A stretch of DNA of 63,273 nucleotides, the filler included, from Octopus bimaculoides (lineage: Eukaryota), in the NCBI RefSeq assembly GCF_001194135.2. It is 5 parts of 5 records of this genome, joined end to end, with 100 filler letters (N's around TTAATTAATTAA, not from the genome) between each part and the next. Parts side by side here need not be neighbours in the genome. Positions count along the whole stretch, not along the records: positions 1 to 11,189 come from NC_068987.1; 4 more parts are not named here. The stretch is one strand, 5' to 3'. Positions 4,965 through 11,289 of the stretch are shown here, in pieces (position 1 is the first letter of the stretch; each line of letters opens with the position of its first letter). The notes beneath the pieces were generated by a model that did not search any database, had not been told where the DNA came from, and worked only from the letters and a program-made list of their open reading frames with translations. The position numbers were made by a program, and so were the translations under genes.

Positions 4965-5216
4965 ATGGAAAACGTACTTCGTAAATACTGCCAGCTATAT
5001 ATACCTGCAGAGGTATATCCTTACATAGAACCAGGTATATATGCAATCCTGTTGGCATCAGGTGGTGCTTTTCTGGTAAGTTTTATCAAACGAGTACACA
5101 TGCACCTGAAAGTTAAGGCAGCCGTAAAGGATGCCCGCAATAAACGTGCAGAACAACTAAAAGCATTGAAAGAGAGGTTACAGAAATCAAGTGTGAGTAT
5201 TTGAAATACAGGTCTA

Positions 5217-5256
<40 letters not shown>

Positions 5257-7218
5257 CCTCTCCCAAGATTCCACACAAGCCAGGAGGCTGCACCAGGCCC
5301 TAATCTGATCTGGCAGTGTTTCTACAGCCGGGTGCCCTTCCTAACGTCAACCACTCCAAGAGTGTAGTGGGTGCTTTTTACATGCCACCGGAGCAGAAGC
5401 CAGTTAGGGCGGCACTGGCATCAGCCATATTCGAATGGTGCTTTTTATGTGCTACCGGCACGGGGCTCACAACTACAATTTCCATTTGATTTGATTTTGG
5501 TATTGCTGATGTTGATGTACTTGACTCAATAGGTCTCCTCAAGCACAGCATATCACTCTATGATCCAAAGTACTTTTAAATGGGCTGGTTATGTGGCACT
5601 GGTGTAGGTTACATCTGTGGACTCACTTTATTTGCCGGGTCTTCTCAGTCACTGCATACCTCCAGAGGTCTCGTCTTTTGTCATTGCCTCTGTGAGGCCC
5701 AACGTTCGAAGGTCATGCTTCACCACCTCATTCCATGTCTTCCTGGGTCTTCCTCTACCCCAGTTCCATGTTTATTTTATCAACCATGAGATGATAAAAA
5801 GCAATGTCAACCACTTGGTGAGATTTTGAACTTTGTAACATAAGAGGCTGTAATTAATTATAGCCAGAATTTTCTCTGGTGTTAGACTGATTCTGTCATT
5901 GACCAGACTCCTTAATTACAAATAATAATTAAATCCATATTCGTTAGTCTCAATAAAAAGATCAGTATCTTAGCCTCATTATCATTTATAAGTTCTTAGG
6001 CTTTGTAAATATTAATCTGGTATATCCCAATTGAAATGCTAGCATGATCTGTTGTGCTACATCGTTTACTCCATAAGGGAACTAAAAATTTATTCTAAAT
6101 ATGAAATGGTGAATCATTAAACTGCAGATAAGAAACTCTTGCGCTGGCAGGAAGGCCTAAACATAGTCACAATCCCAAAACAGAAAATAATATTTAAAAT
6201 GTTGAAATGCTGTTCTTTTTGGTGGGGGTTTCTTCCTTTTAATTTTCATACAAGACCTTTTTTTTTTGTTCATGTCTTTCAGCTAACAGAAGAAATGAGA
6301 ACCAGAATTCTATCATTAGATGTTGTTGAACTCCAGAAGCAACTCAAAGATCGTTCATTAAAAGCAATTGATGTTCTTCAAGCTTATCAGTACAAGGTTG
6401 TTGTTTTTTTTTATTTTATATCTCTTTTTCTGGGGGTTTTTTTAAACCTTTCTTTGATTGTATTTTTTATGTTTCATTGTAAAACAAGTTTGAAAGATGC
6501 ACTACTGAAATTTTGAATCCTTCTAAGAAGAACCTCCACCTATTATCGGCTGGCATTCTGAAAGGTAGGTTATGTGCAATGATTACTGGTAATTTATCAT
6601 TATCATCATCATCATTTAATGTCAGCTTACCATTCTGGCATGTGTAGGATGGTTTGGCAGGGAACCAACCAGCTGCAGGGTTGCATTGAGCTCCAGTGTC
6701 ATCCTCAGCATGATTTTTCCAACAGGATGCCCTTCCTAATGCCAACCACTTTACAGAGTGTACTGAGTCCTTTTTTTGTGCTATTCACACTAGTGAGTTT
6801 GCCATGTAACTTGCAACACAGACAAGAACAGGAAAATGGTTACAAAAATTAGAAGTAATACATTTCTAAATCTCTCAAGAGAGACTTAAGCACTGAAATA
6901 GTATATCTTTGCGAGAGGTAAACAGACTTTTTCAAACAGCCAGTCGTGCTACTTCAGGCTGATGATGAGCAAAGACTCAGAAACATGTCCCTGAATGCAG
7001 GCTAGGCTGGGTGGAGGAGTTTGTCTCCCCCTCGCAAAGATAAAAGGACACAGGAAATGTGTCAAGGCCAACAGGAAGCGGTCCAGCTTCCTAGGGCTAA
7101 ATAGCAGTAGTATATTCCCTTATTGGGACTGTCACGTTAAGTTGGCAGTATACAACTACTTTATCGCATCACTACTGCTTAAGTCTCTCTGAGAGATTTA
7201 GAAATGTATTATTCTAAT

Positions 7219-7250
<32 letters not shown>

Positions 7251-10200
7251 TTTCATTGCTGGAAGATATCCACCCATCACCATAATTGTTGACCTTAACA
7301 GATTATTGTCTTAATCGTTAAAGTTGCATACAAATTGCTGTACAATATTTTGCTATGTACCTTTACATTCTGAATTCATTTCCTACTGTAGCTGACTTTC
7401 TTTTATGCTCATGCTGGGTAAGGACAAAAACAAAATTATGTACCAGTAATACACTGAAAACTGAGTTAAATAACTGTACTTATCTGCTCAAAATTACTGT
7501 CTTTTTGCTAATATTATAAATAAATATTTAGTGATTAACCTCTGGTTTTCTACCTCAGGCACTTGAAGCACAAGAGAAAACCAATTGTTTAATTGCAGTA
7601 ATTCCTGAAGCTGAGGTAAGAAACTTGGCCTGTTCTTTATGCAGACATCAATGTGTATTTTTATGTGTTTTTATATATATTGTTCGTTGTTTTTTTAAGT
7701 CTTCTATATGTTATATGTAGTATTTTGCATCCACAGTTACTTCAAGTGTATTTTGTGTATGCCACAGATATATTCCCTGCCACCTATATATTGTTTACTG
7801 TTTTTCTTTCTGTGTACACATACACCCCCCCTCTCCCTCTGTATTCTTTTATTCTTTTACCTGTTTCAGTCATTTGATTGCGACCATGCTGGAGCACCAC
7901 CTAAGCTTGAATGCAAAAAAAATTTTAACAATTTTGGTTCTCTTCCCAGGAATTAGCACTGAAGTGTGATTCTCTGCCATCAGTGACAAAACCTCTTCAC
8001 GGAATCCCAATTAGTCTGAAAGAAAATATAATCTACAAGGTTGGTTTCTTCTTTGAACTGCAGTTCATGTATTTTCTCATTTTACCTTAAACTTTTCTCT
8101 GTAACTGTGGCAATCATTAACTCTCTTCCCAGTTTCACCCCAATTACTCCTATCCTCTCTTCTATAATATAAGTAACCATGTAACGCCTCTACAGCAAGA
8201 AACCTGGTTTTTGCAACTAGCAAATTCTAGGTTTACAGTTTTATAAATTAAATTGACCACTAAAGGTCAAATAAGCAACAGACTGACTAAGAAAGTAAAA
8301 AAGCTTGAGTAAGGCTTATGAGCAAAGACATTCCACTTATGATCATCCAGTCAGTTTGTATATCAGGGACTATGTTGCTATAGCAGTAAGGTTTGAGAGA
8401 GATTTGGTTGCTATTTATAACAGGTCAGCTGACCATGTAGCAGCTCTGTTGTTGACTAGTGAAATTAACTTGAATGTTTGTTGCTTGACCTTCTTATAGT
8501 AACTGATCTGGGTTTTTTGTTTTTTTGTTTTTTTGCATCCAATTAGGGACTTTACTCAACCAACGGTTTAGGTTCCAGGCTGTTGAACCCACCTTCTGCA
8601 CGTGATTCAAATCTTGTTAAGGTATGTTTTATTTTTATACTCAAAAAATTCTTCAGCCAATTTTAGCAATCTCAGGACCACAATGCAGTTGTGGTAGTGA
8701 AAAGTGAGGGCTTAACCTATTTGATGTCTTTCTTTCTTTCCAAGACTGACTCTAATCCTAAAACACAAAGCTGCCTCCTCCTCATCATCATCATCATTTA
8801 ACCTCCACCTTCCATGCTGGTGTATGTTGGACAGTTTGACAGGAGCTGCCCAGAGAGAAGACTGCACAAGGCTTCAGTGTCTGTTTTTGGCATAGTTTTT
8901 ACAGCTGGATGCACTTCCTAACACCAACCACCCAGCAGAGTGGACTGAATGTTTCATACGGGGCACCAGCACAGGCAAAGTCAGTTTTGGCATGGTTTTT
9001 ACAGCTGAATGCCCCTTCAAACATCAACCATTTTATAGTGTGGGCTGGATGCTTTTTACATGGCACCAGAAATGTTTTAAAATAATTGCATTTAAATTAA
9101 AACTTCTGTCATGTTTTTATGTAATAATGTTATGTTCTAAATCCTAATTTTATAACAGATTTATTTATTTTATCAAATCCTTTCGAAGTCTTGAAATGCT
9201 TGGTGGTGGTTGGTGCAGTGTGTCCTCATTTTATTGTTAGCTTTCTAATTTGTTTTTTTTCTTTCTTTCTTCCTCATTATTTCTATCCTTTCCATCTTTT
9301 AATTTCTTCAAAATGTATTGGTCTTTGCCTTTCCTTTGGATAACATCAGTGGCATGGAGAGGAGGCGCTGGTATGCATGGGTGACTGCTGGTCTTTCACA
9401 AACAACCTTGCCCTGTCTTGTGTCCCACAGGGGAACTTCCTAGGTGCGATCGTACACACTTCATGACTGAATGAAGTCTTTATTGAGCACTATACAATAA
9501 GCTATACAATTAGTGCTATTATTTTTTCCTGAATTCATTACTATTGTCTGGTGCAATTAAATTGATGTTGAACATTTATAATTTCTATTTCAGTGCCTGA
9601 AAGAACTTGGTGCTGTTCCATTTGTCACAACAAATGTACCACAGACTTTGATGAGGTGAGCCATCATTAATTCCTTGGAGCTATATTATAGTCTTCTTTC
9701 CAGTCTTCAACCTTCTATTTACATATCATATCTTGTATGAAATATCCTTTATTTCAAGCTAAAGAGAAAGCATTTATACAATTGCTTAACCTGCTTCAAC
9801 TTAGCCAGAAATTTTTAGGCTTTATTGATTAAACCAATCCTTGTACTTGACTGGTATTTATTTTATCATGCCTGGAAAGATGAATATCAAACTTGGCCTT
9901 AGCAGAATTTGAACTCGGAACATAAACTGCCTCAAGGCATTTTTTTCTGGTGCTCTACTGATTCAACCAGGACAAATATTTTAATTGCTTCTGTTTGTTT
10001 TTATCAGTTGTTGGGATTTTTAGAAATGCATGGTTTGTACATGAGTAGCTTAGAGTTTCCAAGAAATCAATTCTGGCCTTGGATAAGGACAATTCCAAAG
10101 CAGCAGGCATCAAACTAGAAATACAAAACTTTATTTCAAATATTGAACAATAGAAAAGCTCCAATCTGATCTGGCAATGTTTCTACAGCTGGATGCCTTT

Positions 10201-10349
10201 CCTAATGCCAACCACTCCGAGAGTTTAGTGGGTGCTTTTTACGTGCCACCGGCATGGGAGCCAGTCAGGCGGTACTGGCATTGGCCACATTCGGATGGTA
10301 CTTTTTACTTGCTACTGGCACAGGAGCCAGCCAGAGCTGGGGTACTGGC

Positions 10350-10382
<33 letters not shown>

Positions 10383-11059
10383 TAGTATCTCAAAGAAATA
10401 TGTACAGTCCTAAAAAATTTCACTAAAATTGCCATTATTCTGAGAATATCGAAGCAAATCAAATGAAATTTATACTGAATAAAATGTATTATACATGCAA
10501 ACCTTATACAAATTTGGAACACAAAACAATAAACATTTTCAAAGATATGAATGAAATATTAATTTTCAAGTGCTATAGCAAATGTTTATTGTCTTATGTT
10601 TCAAATTTGTATAATGTTTGCATGGATGATATATTTTATTCAGTATAAATTTCGTTTGATTTCCTCCAAAATTTTCAGTGTAATGTCAATTTAACTGAAA
10701 TTTTTTAGGGGTGTACATACTTCTGTAAGATACTGTGTGTGCATGTGTGTGTGTCACTACAGTAGAATGAATTCATGGATAATTGCTTAATTGCTTGCAT
10801 TTATTTTTATCAATTGTTTTTAACTTTTGTGTATTTATATTTTTCTTTGCAGTATCTCATGCGATAATAATATTTATGGACAGACTAGTAACCCACATAA
10901 AGCTGATCGTTGTCCTGCAGGGTCCAGTGGAGGAGAAGCAGCTCTCATAGGTTATGGTGGATCAATTTTGGGTATAGGATCGGATATTGGTGGTAGCATT
11001 CGCTGTCCAGCTCACTTTTGTGGTATTTATGGATTAAAAACAACTATTACTCGTATGGG
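4965..11059 (+). CDS. FAAH: Fatty acid amide hydrolase (amidase-signature family), 5' part only; coding exons 4965-5192, 6283-6396, 7559-7615, 7950-8039, 8547-8621, 9594-9655, 10853-11059
   Basis: All introns are GT-AG and phase-consistent (0,0,0,0,0,2, then a phase-2 donor at 11060). The spliced ~277 aa product has an N-terminal hydrophobic anchor ([18 protein letters not shown]), [12 protein letters not shown] (catalytic Lys), [34 protein letters not shown] (cis-Ser), [24 protein letters not shown] (nucleophile Ser). Confidence 0.95.
5270..5480 (-). mobile_element. RTE-tail-like interspersed repeat copy (FAAH intron)
   Basis: ggctgcaccagg…ctgatctggcagtgtttctacagccgggtgcccttcctaacgtcaaccactccaagagtgtagtgggtgc, near-identical to 10150-10348 and 6598-6840. 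Confidence 0.7.
6846..7220 (+). mobile_element. Non-coding 375-bp element with ~46-bp terminal inverted repeats carrying a hammerhead ribozyme (retrozyme / non-autonomous Penelope-like candidate)
   Basis: Left arm 6846-6892 (aaattagaagtaatacatttctaaatctctcaagagagacttaagca) equals the reverse complement of the right arm 7176-7220 except two 1-nt indels. The interior is strongly self-complementary, contains a hammerhead core and has no recognisable coding capacity. A (TA)n run follows at 7221. Confidence 0.75.
6953..6995 (+). ncRNA. Type I hammerhead ribozyme (minimal stem III)
   Basis: Stem I TTCAGG 6953-6958 / CCTGAA 6990-6995; core CTGATGA 6959-6965; stem II TGAG 6966-6969 / CTCA 6976-6979 with loop CAAAGA; GAAA 6980-6983; stem III AC-AT-GT; GUC triplet 6987-6989 (predicted cut after C6989). 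Confidence 0.85.
10150..10348 (-). mobile_element. RTE-tail-like interspersed repeat copy (FAAH intron)
   Basis: gctccaatctgatctggcaatgtttctacagctggatgcctttcctaatgccaaccactccgagagtttagtgggtgc…, same family as 5270-5480. Confidence 0.7.
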
Positions 11060-11105: not shown

Positions 11106-11289
11106 TCTTTTACTCTTTTACTTGTTTCAGTCATTTGACTGCGGCCATGCTGGAGCACCGCCTTTAGTTGAGCAAATTGACCCTGGGACNNNNNNNNNNN
11201 NNNNNNNNNNNNNNNNNNNNNNNNNNNNNNNNNTTAATTAATTAANNNNNNNNNNNNNNNNNNNNNNNNNNNNNNNNNNNNNNNNNNNN

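What the first reader, a model, noticed from the sequence alone, without database searches (positions are those of the whole stretch)
6953..6995. Complete type I hammerhead ribozyme in a FAAH intron
Every conserved hammerhead position is present and every helix can form. Stem I is TTCAGG/CCTGAA (6 bp), the core is CUGAUGA, stem II is UGAG/CUCA with loop CAAAGA, then GAAA and the A15.1-U16.1 and C-G pairs, and a GUC cleavage triplet (cut after C6989). Stem III is minimal (AC-AU-GU) and ACAUGU is self-complementary. Established knowledge: this is the signature of the minimal type I hammerheads of Penelope-like elements and metazoan non-LTR retrozymes, which typically cleave efficiently as dimers. 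Deviation: the first stem II pair is U-A rather than the usual purine-pyrimidine. No supplied ORF explains the stretch.
Basis: partly seen in the sequence, partly recalled or inferred. Interest (0 to 1): 0.92.

Follow-up and report, generated by a model that had tools for sequence, protein, structure and literature searches.

The report
Hammerhead ribozyme repeat in intron
A complete self-cutting "hammerhead" RNA motif sits at the tip of a 385-base, hairpin-rich repeat copy inside an intron of a cephalopod FAAH-like gene; ribozyme-carrying repeats like this are common in animal genomes, so the find looks genuine but is ordinary.

Summary
The motif is at 6953-6995 (+), as described. It has a 6-bp helix I, a CUGAUGA core, a 4-bp helix II with loop CAAAGA, GAAA, an A-U pair capped by the palindrome CAUG, and a GUC cleavage triplet. 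It is the only such core in the window. It fails every Rfam gathering score. On a short stretch it aligns end to end with Hammerhead_HH9 at 25.5 bits (cut-off 52), including loop 1 (UAC) and loop 2. A descriptor match this strong appeared in 2 of 12,000 shuffles.

By the published definition it is a canonical metazoan type I hammerhead with a weak, dimer-dependent helix III. It is not the minimal Penelope type.

It caps a 139-nt hairpin inside a 385-nt, 40% GC element (6841-7225). That element has 52-bp inverted ends and an extremely stable fold (z = -12). It lies on the sense strand of intron 2 of an octopod-like FAAH1-like gene. The Octopus bimaculoides homologue lacks it.

The best reading is a solo monomer of a hammerhead-bearing non-autonomous retroelement (non-LTR retrozyme, Penelope-derived). 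Copy number, tandem arrays and cleavage could not be tested. It is a new member of a known kind, of low to moderate interest.

The parts
6953..6995 (+). Type I hammerhead ribozyme motif. Helix I 6953-6958/6990-6995; core CUGAUGA 6959-6965; helix II 6966-6969/6976-6979; loop 2 CAAAGA 6970-6975; GAAA 6980-6983; helix III A6983-U6988 enclosing the palindrome CAUG; C17 = 6989. Predicted cut between 6989 and 6990.
   Evidence: Read directly. Only core in the window. Only descriptor hit. Full-length HH9 covariance-model alignment at 25.5 bits.
6947..6999 (+). Loop 1 region and closing helix. Internal loop UAC (6950-6952) opposite U6996, closed by UGC 6947-6949 pairing with GCA 6997-6999. This is the position of the loop 1 partner of loop 2 in canonical type I hammerheads.
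   Evidence: MFE fold. Aligns with UUAC of the HH9 consensus.
6904..7042 (+). 139-nt hairpin arm that extends helix I by about 39 further base pairs. The hammerhead is at its apex.
   Evidence: Inverted repeat I5. Self-match 6904-7042. Helix list.
6841..6892 (+). Left terminal inverted repeat of the element.
   Evidence: 52-bp inverted match to 7176-7225 at 92%, with a 22-bp perfect core 6856-6877/7190-7211. It forms a 45-bp closing stem in the fold.
7176..7225 (+). Right terminal inverted repeat of the element.
   Evidence: Same as the left arm.
7043..7175 (+). Branched interior of the element: three local hairpins at 7047-7063, 7066-7098 and 7101-7164.
   Evidence: MFE fold of 6841-7225: -171 kcal/mol, 135 bp in 385 nt. 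z = -12.2 for 6850-7215.
6841..7225 (+). Whole hammerhead-bearing element (approximate limits): 385 nt, 40% GC, single copy in the window.
   Evidence: No Pfam domain in its 65-aa ORF. No protein resembling any of its six frames.
7216..7255 (.). (TA)13-T12 microsatellite touching the right end of the element.
   Evidence: Read directly. (TA)n is a reported Penelope-like-element target bias (PMC8557442). This is only suggestive.
6397..7558 (+). Intron 2 of the FAAH1-like host gene (GT...AG). The element lies on the sense strand.
   Evidence: tblastn of O. bimaculoides FAAH1-like against the window. Splice sites read directly.

Best explanation
The stretch is a real hammerhead ribozyme of the canonical metazoan type I class. 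It is carried by a single (solo) copy of a small non-coding, non-autonomous retroelement of the non-LTR retrozyme / Penelope-derived kind. That copy inserted, in sense orientation, into intron 2 of a cephalopod FAAH1-like gene.

How it would work. The element is transcribed as part of the host pre-mRNA. Its RNA folds into a 139-nt hairpin whose apex is the hammerhead. The core catalyses attack of the 2'-OH of C6989 on the next phosphate. This leaves a 2',3'-cyclic phosphate on C6989 and a 5'-OH on C6990.

Helix III is only an A-U pair closing the palindrome CAUG, so one copy alone should cut slowly. Two copies can pair ACAUGU with ACAUGU to build a 6-bp helix III (a double hammerhead), as shown for newt and axolotl repeats. 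In tandem arrays of such a family this releases unit-length RNAs. Those are ligated into highly self-paired circles and copied back into DNA by a Penelope-like reverse transcriptase.

At this locus there is only one copy, so no circle can be released. The most likely consequence for the host gene is none, or a slight loss of pre-mRNA.

Shown here: the motif, the fold predictions, the host gene and strand, and the element's absence from the O. bimaculoides homologue. Inferred: catalytic activity, family membership, how the element moves, and the lack of a host function.
For: 1. The motif is complete and unique in the window. Matches of comparable strength occurred in 2 of 12,000 shuffles.
2. 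It aligns over the full HH9 model, including the UAC of loop 1 and CAAANA of loop 2, which the descriptor does not require.
3. It fits the published definition of canonical metazoan type I hammerheads: helix I of 6 bp, helix II of 4 bp, helix III of 1-2 bp with a 2-4 nt palindromic loop (PMC4209133, read).
4. The double-hammerhead pairing scores -26.6 kcal/mol. That compares with 2 x -11.3 for two monomers without helix III and 2 x -5.0 with the 1-bp helix III.
5. The element matches retrozyme traits in PMC7229834:
   - Size: 385 nt, within the 150-450 bp range; mussel units are 350-390 bp.
   - GC content: 40%, under the 50% limit.
   - Self-pairing: 71% of bases paired as a circle, and z = -12.2.
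6. Solo monomers are common and dispersed in Xenopus, many of them in introns (10.64898/2026.07.22.740005).
7. The homologous intron 2 of the O. bimaculoides FAAH1-like gene has no gaps (no N runs) yet lacks both the element and any hammerhead core. Intron flanks of the two genes are only 70-77% identical, while the element's two arms are 92% identical. This points to an insertion younger than the split of the two genes.
8. A (TA)n tract abuts the element, and PLE endonucleases favour microsatellites (PMC8557442).
Against: - There is only one copy in 11 kb. No tandem partner, target-site duplication or reverse-transcriptase remnant was seen.
- No Rfam gathering-score hit. HH9 reaches only 25.5 of the 52 bits required.
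- The pair next to the core reads U-A rather than the highly conserved G10.1-C11.1, unless U6966 and A6979 are extra bases. Either way activity may be reduced.
- The genomic copy is not permuted at the cleavage site. Its ends are inverted repeats, which is what a DNA-transposon-like foldback element also looks like.
- No other copy of the element could be found with the collections available. Multi-copy status is therefore unproven.
- The MFE fold pairs core bases AUG 6962-6964 with CAU 6984-6986. That is an inactive alternative.
Confidence: 0.6

Rival explanations
1. The carrier is a foldback or MITE-like DNA transposon (or simply an inverted-duplication hairpin) that holds a hammerhead. The ribozyme would be a passenger, or a relic of an older retroelement captured in the hairpin. 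Movement would be by cut-and-paste, not through circular RNA.
For: 52-bp terminal inverted repeats at 92% identity with a 22-bp perfect core. Small size, AT-rich, intronic. A second long foldback (10364-10754, 175-nt arms) lies in the same window, so such structures are common in this genome. The copy is not permuted at the ribozyme cut site.
Against: No target-site duplication could be identified at the ends. The interior is also strongly self-paired around the ribozyme, which is typical of retrozyme RNAs. Canonical type I hammerheads in animals are reported mostly in retrozymes and PLE-related repeats (PMC7229834, PMC4209133).
Confidence: 0.17
2. The motif is a domesticated intronic hammerhead, like HH9 in the amniote RECK intron. 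Sense-strand self-cleavage of intron 2 would tune FAAH1-like mRNA output or splicing. Alternatively the long hairpin serves as a double-stranded RNA substrate.
For: Sense orientation in a canonical GT...AG intron. The best Rfam alignment is to the intronic family HH9. The core and all stems are intact, and the arms are well preserved.
Against: It is absent from intron 2 of the only homologous gene that could be fetched, in O. bimaculoides. The weak helix III predicts poor cleavage as a single copy. Intactness is equally explained by a young insertion.
Confidence: 0.08
3. It is a chance look-alike: a hairpin repeat whose apical internal loops happen to spell the hammerhead core. It was never a ribozyme.
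For: A descriptor-level match occurs in about 2e-4 of shuffled windows. That scales to tens per Gb-sized genome (my extrapolation). The 25.5-bit HH9 score is below Rfam's cut-off, and rescaled to several Gb its E-value approaches 1 (my rescaling). A hairpin supplies stems I and II for free.
Against: Even given the stems, the asymmetric core needs about 11 fixed bases plus a palindromic 15.2-16.2. The motif also has loop 2 CAAAGA and loop 1 UAC at the canonical distances, all ten stem pairs Watson-Crick, and GUC as the triplet. The 24-base pattern CTGATGANNNNCAAANANNNNGAAACATGTC is absent from 596 Gb of prokaryotic genomes. The looser pattern ending GAAACNNGTC is absent from IMG/VR.
Confidence: 0.07

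Closest known systems
Canonical metazoan type I hammerheads of non-LTR retrozymes and satellite repeats (newt satellite 2, axolotl HHR_Amex1, Schistosoma Sm-alpha, coral and mussel retrozymes; PMC7229834, PMC4209133)
   Same: Helix I of 6 bp, helix II of 4 bp, and loop 1 and loop 2 sequences of the canonical kind. Helix III is reduced to one A-U pair capped by a palindromic tetraloop, exactly as described for HHR_Amex1. The carrier is about 385 nt, low in GC and highly self-paired.
   Different: Here it is a single copy, not a tandem array. The copy ends in 52-bp inverted repeats. The pair next to the core is U-A (or G-C flanked by two extra bases). No cephalopod retrozyme is described in the papers searched.
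Rfam Hammerhead_HH9 (RF02275), the intronic hammerhead of amniote RECK and related genes
   Same: It is the best-scoring Rfam family and aligns over the full model: UAC loop 1, 6-bp helix I, CUGAUGA, 4-bp helix II, CAAANA loop 2, GAAAC...GUC. It also lies on the sense strand of an intron.
   Different: 25.5 bits against a gathering score of 52. Helix III is truncated by five positions and the outer helix differs. It is not conserved in the homologous octopus intron. HH9 is an amniote family.
Minimal hammerheads in the pseudo-LTRs of Penelope-like elements (PMC4209133)
   Same: Palindromic 15.2-16.2 with GAAACAUGUC. A U directly after A9, as in the nucleotide conserved between positions 9 and 10.1. 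Expected dimeric action. Adjacent (TA)n. Inverted-repeat architecture is frequent around PLE insertions (PMC8557442). A metagenome repeat family with the same GAAACATGTC and extra U was found.
   Different: [quoted passage not shown] No RT/GIY-YIG coding sequence or direct pseudo-LTR is present in the window.
Plant LTR retrozymes and viroid-like circular RNAs with hammerheads (PMC4918200)
   Same: A non-coding, strongly self-paired RNA unit that carries a hammerhead.
   Different: Those use type III hammerheads in direct LTRs with PBS and PPT, about 700 bp between ribozymes, GC above 55% and 4-bp target duplications. None of these features is present here.

Membership tests
Hammerhead ribozyme, type I | Conserved core: C3 U4 G5 A6 N7 G8 A9, G12 A13 A14, A15.1-U16.1, and a non-G at position 17. 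| tested here: met
   All positions are present at 6959-6965, 6980-6983, 6988 and 6989.
Hammerhead ribozyme, type I | Three helices around the core, with helix I open-ended. | tested here: met
   Helix I has 6 Watson-Crick pairs and helix II has 4. Helix III is a single A-U pair plus CAUG in cis, or 6 bp as a dimer. Helix I continues into the flanking hairpin.
Hammerhead ribozyme, type I | G10.1-C11.1 pair adjacent to the core. | tested here: inconclusive
   The direct register gives U6966-A6979. [quoted passage not shown]
Hammerhead ribozyme, type I | Reaches the Rfam gathering score of a hammerhead family. | tested here: not met
   No hit at gathering score. The best is HH9 at 25.5 bits against 52.
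Hammerhead ribozyme, type I | Site-specific self-cleavage. | not testable with these tools
   Needs transcription and cleavage assays.
Canonical metazoan type I hammerhead (definition in PMC4209133) | Helix I of 6 bp and helix II of 4 bp, with conserved interacting loops. | tested here: met
   Stem lengths are exact. Loop 1 UAC and loop 2 CAAAGA align with UUAC and CAAAAA of the HH9 consensus. The tertiary contact itself is inferred.
Canonical metazoan type I hammerhead (definition in PMC4209133) | Helix III of 1-2 bp capped by a 2-4 nt palindromic loop. | tested here: met
   A6983-U6988 encloses CAUG, and ACAUGU is self-complementary.
Non-LTR retrozyme (PMC7229834) | Head-to-tail tandem repeats, each with a hammerhead. 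| tested here: not met
   One copy and one core in the 11,189-nt piece. Solo monomers of such families are known (10.64898/2026.07.22.740005), so this does not exclude derivation from one.
Non-LTR retrozyme (PMC7229834) | Unit of 150-450 bp, GC below 50%, no LTR, PBS or PPT, and no coding capacity. | tested here: met
   385 nt at 40% GC. The longest ORF is 65 aa with no Pfam match. No protein homologue in any frame.
Non-LTR retrozyme (PMC7229834) | RNA predicted to be stable and highly self-paired. | tested here: met
   z = -12.2. Circular fold of -161.7 kcal/mol with 71% of bases paired.
Non-LTR retrozyme (PMC7229834) | Multi-copy in the genome and expressed as circular RNA. | not testable with these tools
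   No cephalopod genome or transcriptome can be searched by DNA here. Indirect attempts found nothing.
Penelope-like element minimal hammerhead / pseudo-LTR | Minimal architecture: helix II longer than 4 bp, helix I of 4-5 bp, no tertiary loops and no helix III. | tested here: not met
   The architecture is the canonical one.
Penelope-like element minimal hammerhead / pseudo-LTR | Lies in direct or inverted pseudo-LTRs flanking an RT + GIY-YIG ORF. | tested here: not met
   No ORF above 138 aa, and no RT or endonuclease domain in the ten ORFs scanned (nine of the largest plus the element's own 65-aa ORF). Full six-frame domain scanning was not done.
Rfam Hammerhead_HH9 (domesticated intronic hammerhead) | Conserved at the orthologous intron position across species. 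| tested here: not met
   Absent from intron 2 of the O. bimaculoides FAAH1-like homologue L018. That gene may be a paralogue, so the test is weak.
MITE / foldback DNA transposon | Terminal inverted repeats plus a target-site duplication. | tested here: inconclusive
   Inverted ends are present (52 bp, 92%). No duplication is recognisable, and the right flank is a (TA)n tract that would hide a TA duplication.

The most novel reading that the evidence does not exclude
The 385-nt unit could represent an undescribed cephalopod class of hammerhead carrier. One version is a foldback element with long inverted ends whose apex is a canonical type I ribozyme, moved as DNA or integrated from a circular RNA opened at the hairpin loop opposite the ribozyme. 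Another version is that the octopod FAAH1-like gene has taken it over as a sense-strand intronic switch or double-stranded RNA substrate.
Probability: 0.1. Interest if true: 0.6.

Novelty: new member of a known kind. Interest (0 to 1): 0.3.

Why it matters
If confirmed, this adds a cephalopod example to the known spread of hammerhead-bearing retroelements in animals. It also gives a clean, intact test case of a canonical type I motif with a one-pair helix III and an unusual base pair next to the core.

It does not open a new question. Thousands of comparable motifs are catalogued, intronic solo copies are common, and hammerheads have already been counted in a squid genome.

Its practical value is as an annotation. 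Intron 2 of this FAAH1-like gene holds a ribozyme-carrying repeat, not a regulatory element of the gene.

Tried and rejected
- **Rfam, whole piece at gathering score:** nothing.
- **Rfam, 6700-7300 at E <= 10:** only noise. The hammerhead was lost to the filters and recovered only on a 76-nt stretch.
- **Six-frame translation of the element, joined with X, against 5.8 billion proteins:** this was meant to catch ORFs called on other copies. No hit.
- **Exact look-ups of the element's 65-aa ORF and two neighbouring ORFs:** not on record.
- **Pattern scans:**
  - IMG/VR: none.
  - Prokaryotic genomes: none.
  - JGI metagenomes: 16 loci, none related to this element. Most belong to one other repeat family (probably from an insect; source not checked) with a Penelope-like minimal motif. 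Three (L003, L005, L010) show no stems and look like chance matches.
- **Reverse transcriptase near those metagenome motifs:** no long ORFs of that kind.
- **Second copy or degenerate partner in the window:** low-stringency BLAST found none.
- **Rebuilding an empty site from the flanks or from the O. bimaculoides homologue:** the flanks are unique and the two introns are filled with different repeats.
- **Pfam scan by DNA reference of whole frames:** Only ten ORFs were scanned, nine of the largest plus the element's own 65-aa ORF.
- **A first hand-written dimer structure was mis-nested** and was redone correctly.
- **Rejected: type III or plant LTR retrozyme, and viroid-like agent.** Wrong topology, no LTRs, and the copy is integrated in a nuclear intron.
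Full report
**Observation**

The sequence at 6953-6995 on the + strand reads TTCAGG CTGATGA TGAG CAAAGA CTCA GAAA CATGT C CCTGAA. In hammerhead numbering:

| Part | Coordinates |
|---|---|
| Helix I | 6953-6958 with 6990-6995 (six Watson-Crick pairs) |
| C3-A9 | 6959-6965 |
| Helix II | 6966-6969 with 6976-6979 (four Watson-Crick pairs) |
| Loop 2 | 6970-6975 |
| G12 A13 A14 | 6980-6982 |
| A15.1 / U16.1 | 6983 / 6988, enclosing the palindrome CAUG |
| C17 | 6989 |

A scan for CTGANGA...GAAA found no other core on either strand of the 11,189-nt piece. A type I descriptor found this site only.

**Is it more than chance?**

- A relaxed descriptor (helix I of 4 or more, helix II of 3 or more, G-U allowed, helix III hairpin or short palindrome) hit 14 times in 3,000 dinucleotide-preserving shuffles and 43 times in 12,000.
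- Only 2 of 12,000 shuffles reached helix I of 6 or more together with helix II of 4 or more. That is about 2e-4 per window.
- Scaled linearly to a genome of a few Gb (my extrapolation), the descriptor alone would still be met tens of times by chance. The features outside the descriptor therefore carry weight.
- Those features are: all ten stem pairs are Watson-Crick, loop 2 is CAAAGA, and an internal loop UAC follows helix I at the canonical distance.

Rfam gave no hit at gathering score. Nothing was listed for 6700-7300, where the speed filters are stricter. On 6935-7010 the best match of all 4,227 families is Hammerhead_HH9 at 25.5 bits (gathering 52), E = 5.9e-5 for that search. The alignment covers the whole model. 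It matches UAC, the 6-bp helix I, CUGAUGA, the 4-bp helix II, CAAANA, GAAAC and GUC, and the gap falls in helix III.

As specificity controls, the looser pattern CTGATGANNNNCAAANANNNNGAAACNNGTC is absent from IMG/VR. The stricter version ending GAAACATGTC is absent from 596 Gb of prokaryotic genomes.

I conclude the motif is real in the evolutionary sense. I note that it formally fails Rfam's threshold.

**What kind of hammerhead**

Cervera and de la Pena define the canonical metazoan type I hammerhead as follows (PMC4209133): helix I of 6 bp and helix II of 4 bp interacting through conserved loops, and helix III of 1-2 bp capped by a 2-4 nt palindromic loop. This motif fits every term.

Their minimal Penelope-type motif does not fit. 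[quoted passage not shown] That is the closest published description.

[quoted passage not shown] A metagenome repeat family found here shows exactly CTGATGA-T-GGCC...GGCC-GAAACATGTC. U6966 may be that nucleotide, which would make G6967-C6978 the conserved pair and A6979 an extra base. Which register holds in the folded RNA cannot be decided here. Either one could lower activity.

**Monomer versus dimer**

| Structure (59-nt segment 6945-7003) | Energy |
|---|---|
| MFE (pairs core AUG 6962-6964 with CAU 6984-6986, an inactive alternative) | -14.4 kcal/mol |
| Active-like fold without helix III | -11.3 |
| Active-like fold with the lone A-U pair | -5.0 |
| Double hammerhead (two copies exchange helix I strands, ACAUGU pairs with ACAUGU) | -26.6, including the bimolecular penalty |

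They agree with the published behaviour of newt and axolotl motifs, which cut weakly as monomers and efficiently as dimers (PMC7229834, PMC6155905). Activity itself was not tested.

**Surroundings**

The hammerhead is the apex of a 139-nt hairpin (6904-7042) that extends helix I by about 39 pairs. This arm and three small hairpins (7047-7164) are closed by a 45-bp stem made of inverted ends. Those ends (6841-6892 and 7176-7225) are 52 bp long and 92% identical, with a 22-bp perfect core.

- The 366-nt stretch 6850-7215 folds at -165 kcal/mol, against -92 +/- 6 for shuffles (z = -12.2).
- As a circle, 71% of bases are paired. GC content is 40%.
- The element is unique in the window.
- Its longest ORF is 65 aa with no Pfam match. 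No frame resembles any of 5.8 billion proteins.
- Its right end touches (TA)13-T12.
- Its left flank is a SINE-like repeat also present at three other places in the window.
- No target-site duplication could be recognised.

**Host gene and taxon**

Seven exon-sized matches on the + strand align in order with 'fatty acid amide hydrolase 1-like' of Octopus bimaculoides at 59-75% amino-acid identity. They lie at 4965-5195, 6283-6396, 7559-7615, 7941-8039, 8547-8621, 9585-9653 and 10851-11057. The last carries the amidase signature GSSGGE...GSDIGGSIR.

Intron 2 is 6397-7558 with GT...AG. The hammerhead is on the sense strand near its middle.

The O. bimaculoides gene locus (L018) is collinear with the window at 70-83% nucleotide identity in and around the exons. 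It shares the window's SINE families at up to 95%. The window therefore comes from an octopod-like genome. The two genes are either paralogues or distant orthologues, and a third homologue (L001) is equally distant.

Intron 2 of L018 (about 14023-14954, no gaps) contains neither the element nor any hammerhead core. Intron flanks of the two genes are 70-77% identical, whereas the element's two arms are 92% identical. This suggests the insertion is younger than the gene split, or that its structure is maintained (inference).

**Interpretation**

Size, composition, lack of coding capacity and extreme self-pairing all match the non-LTR retrozymes described in corals, mussels and amphibians (PMC7229834). 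So does the canonical type I motif with a dimer-dependent helix III. A 2026 preprint derives these retrozymes from the pseudo-LTRs of Penelope-like elements (10.64898/2026.07.22.740005).

The defining tandem arrangement is not present here. The same preprint reports dispersed monomers as a normal fraction of such families, with about 43% of Xenopus copies overlapping introns.

I therefore read the locus as a solo monomer of such a family. It would be co-transcribed with the host intron and able at most to cut slowly on its own. It cannot release a circle, because that needs two cuts. The adjacency to (TA)n and the inverted ends are compatible with Penelope-type integration (PMC8557442), but they are weak evidence.

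**Rivals**

- *A foldback or MITE-like DNA element carrying the ribozyme.* This is the main alternative. The copy ends in long inverted repeats, is not permuted at the cut site, and another long foldback lies at 10364-10754.
- *A domesticated intronic ribozyme of the HH9 kind.* The sense orientation makes this possible. It is disfavoured by absence from the homologous intron and by the weak helix III.
- *Pure chance.* This is unlikely given the loop matches, but a sub-threshold covariance score in a Gb-sized genome cannot exclude it by sequence alone.

**What could not be done**

No cephalopod genome or transcriptome is searchable by DNA with the tools available. Copy number, tandem arrays, covariation among copies, links to Penelope elements and circular RNA expression all remain open. 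Indirect routes all came back empty:

- protein look-ups and six-frame searches;
- pattern scans of viral and prokaryotic collections;
- the metagenome scan, which returned only unrelated families.

**Novelty and score**

Hammerheads of this class are known in hundreds to more than 100,000 copies per animal genome. 235 Hammerhead_1 matches are reported for the giant squid (PMC6962438). I found no paper describing octopod retrozymes.

This is a new member of a known kind.

Noticed in passing
window 10364-10754: A second long foldback: two 175-nt arms, 85% complementary, 41 nt apart, bordered by (CA)n/(TG)n runs, in the intron before the amidase-signature exon. It has no hammerhead core. It looks like a MITE or an inverted duplication.
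   Followed up: partly
window 6597-6840, 8779-9069, 5297-5470, 10158-10330; also 7845-7902 and 11106-11163: Two SINE-like repeat families. One is built of subrepeats of roughly 65-100 nt containing GGTGCTTTTTAC..CCACCGGCA. Both also occur several times in the O. bimaculoides locus L018 at 70-95% identity, which places the window in an octopod-like genome.
   Followed up: partly
window 4965-11057 (+): Seven exons of an FAAH1-like amidase gene with short introns. It is collinear with an O. bimaculoides gene at only 59-75% amino-acid identity. A third, equally distant homologue sits on a Logan contig (L001). This suggests a multi-copy FAAH-like family, or a species distant from O. bimaculoides. 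No near-identical protein is in the protein collection.
   Followed up: partly
L002, L006, L007, L009, L011, L012, L013, L015, L017 (metagenome contigs): One repeat family, probably from an insect genome (source not checked), carries CTGATGA-T-GGCC-AAATA-GGCC-GAAACATGTC. This is a Penelope-like minimal hammerhead with the extra U after A9. In L011, 4748-5198 is a 96% palindrome with one motif per arm, and L017 shows the same arrangement. L014 holds a different, well-paired motif of the same style.
   Followed up: partly
window 7216-7255 and 5213-5262: Two microsatellites: (TA)13 followed by T12, directly abutting the right end of the hammerhead element, and a (TC)n run just downstream of exon 1.
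   Followed up: no
L018 8675-9326 (-): Remnant of a mariner-type transposase (…PHPPYFPDLAPSDYHLFHSLQNHL…) upstream of the O. bimaculoides FAAH1-like gene, interrupted by an assembly gap.
   Followed up: no
window 6856-6892 and 7176-7211: Each terminal arm of the element contains its own short palindrome (TCTCTCAAGAGAGA on the left, TCTCTCTGAGAGA on the right). The arms could therefore also pair with themselves or between copies. The significance is unknown.
   Followed up: no
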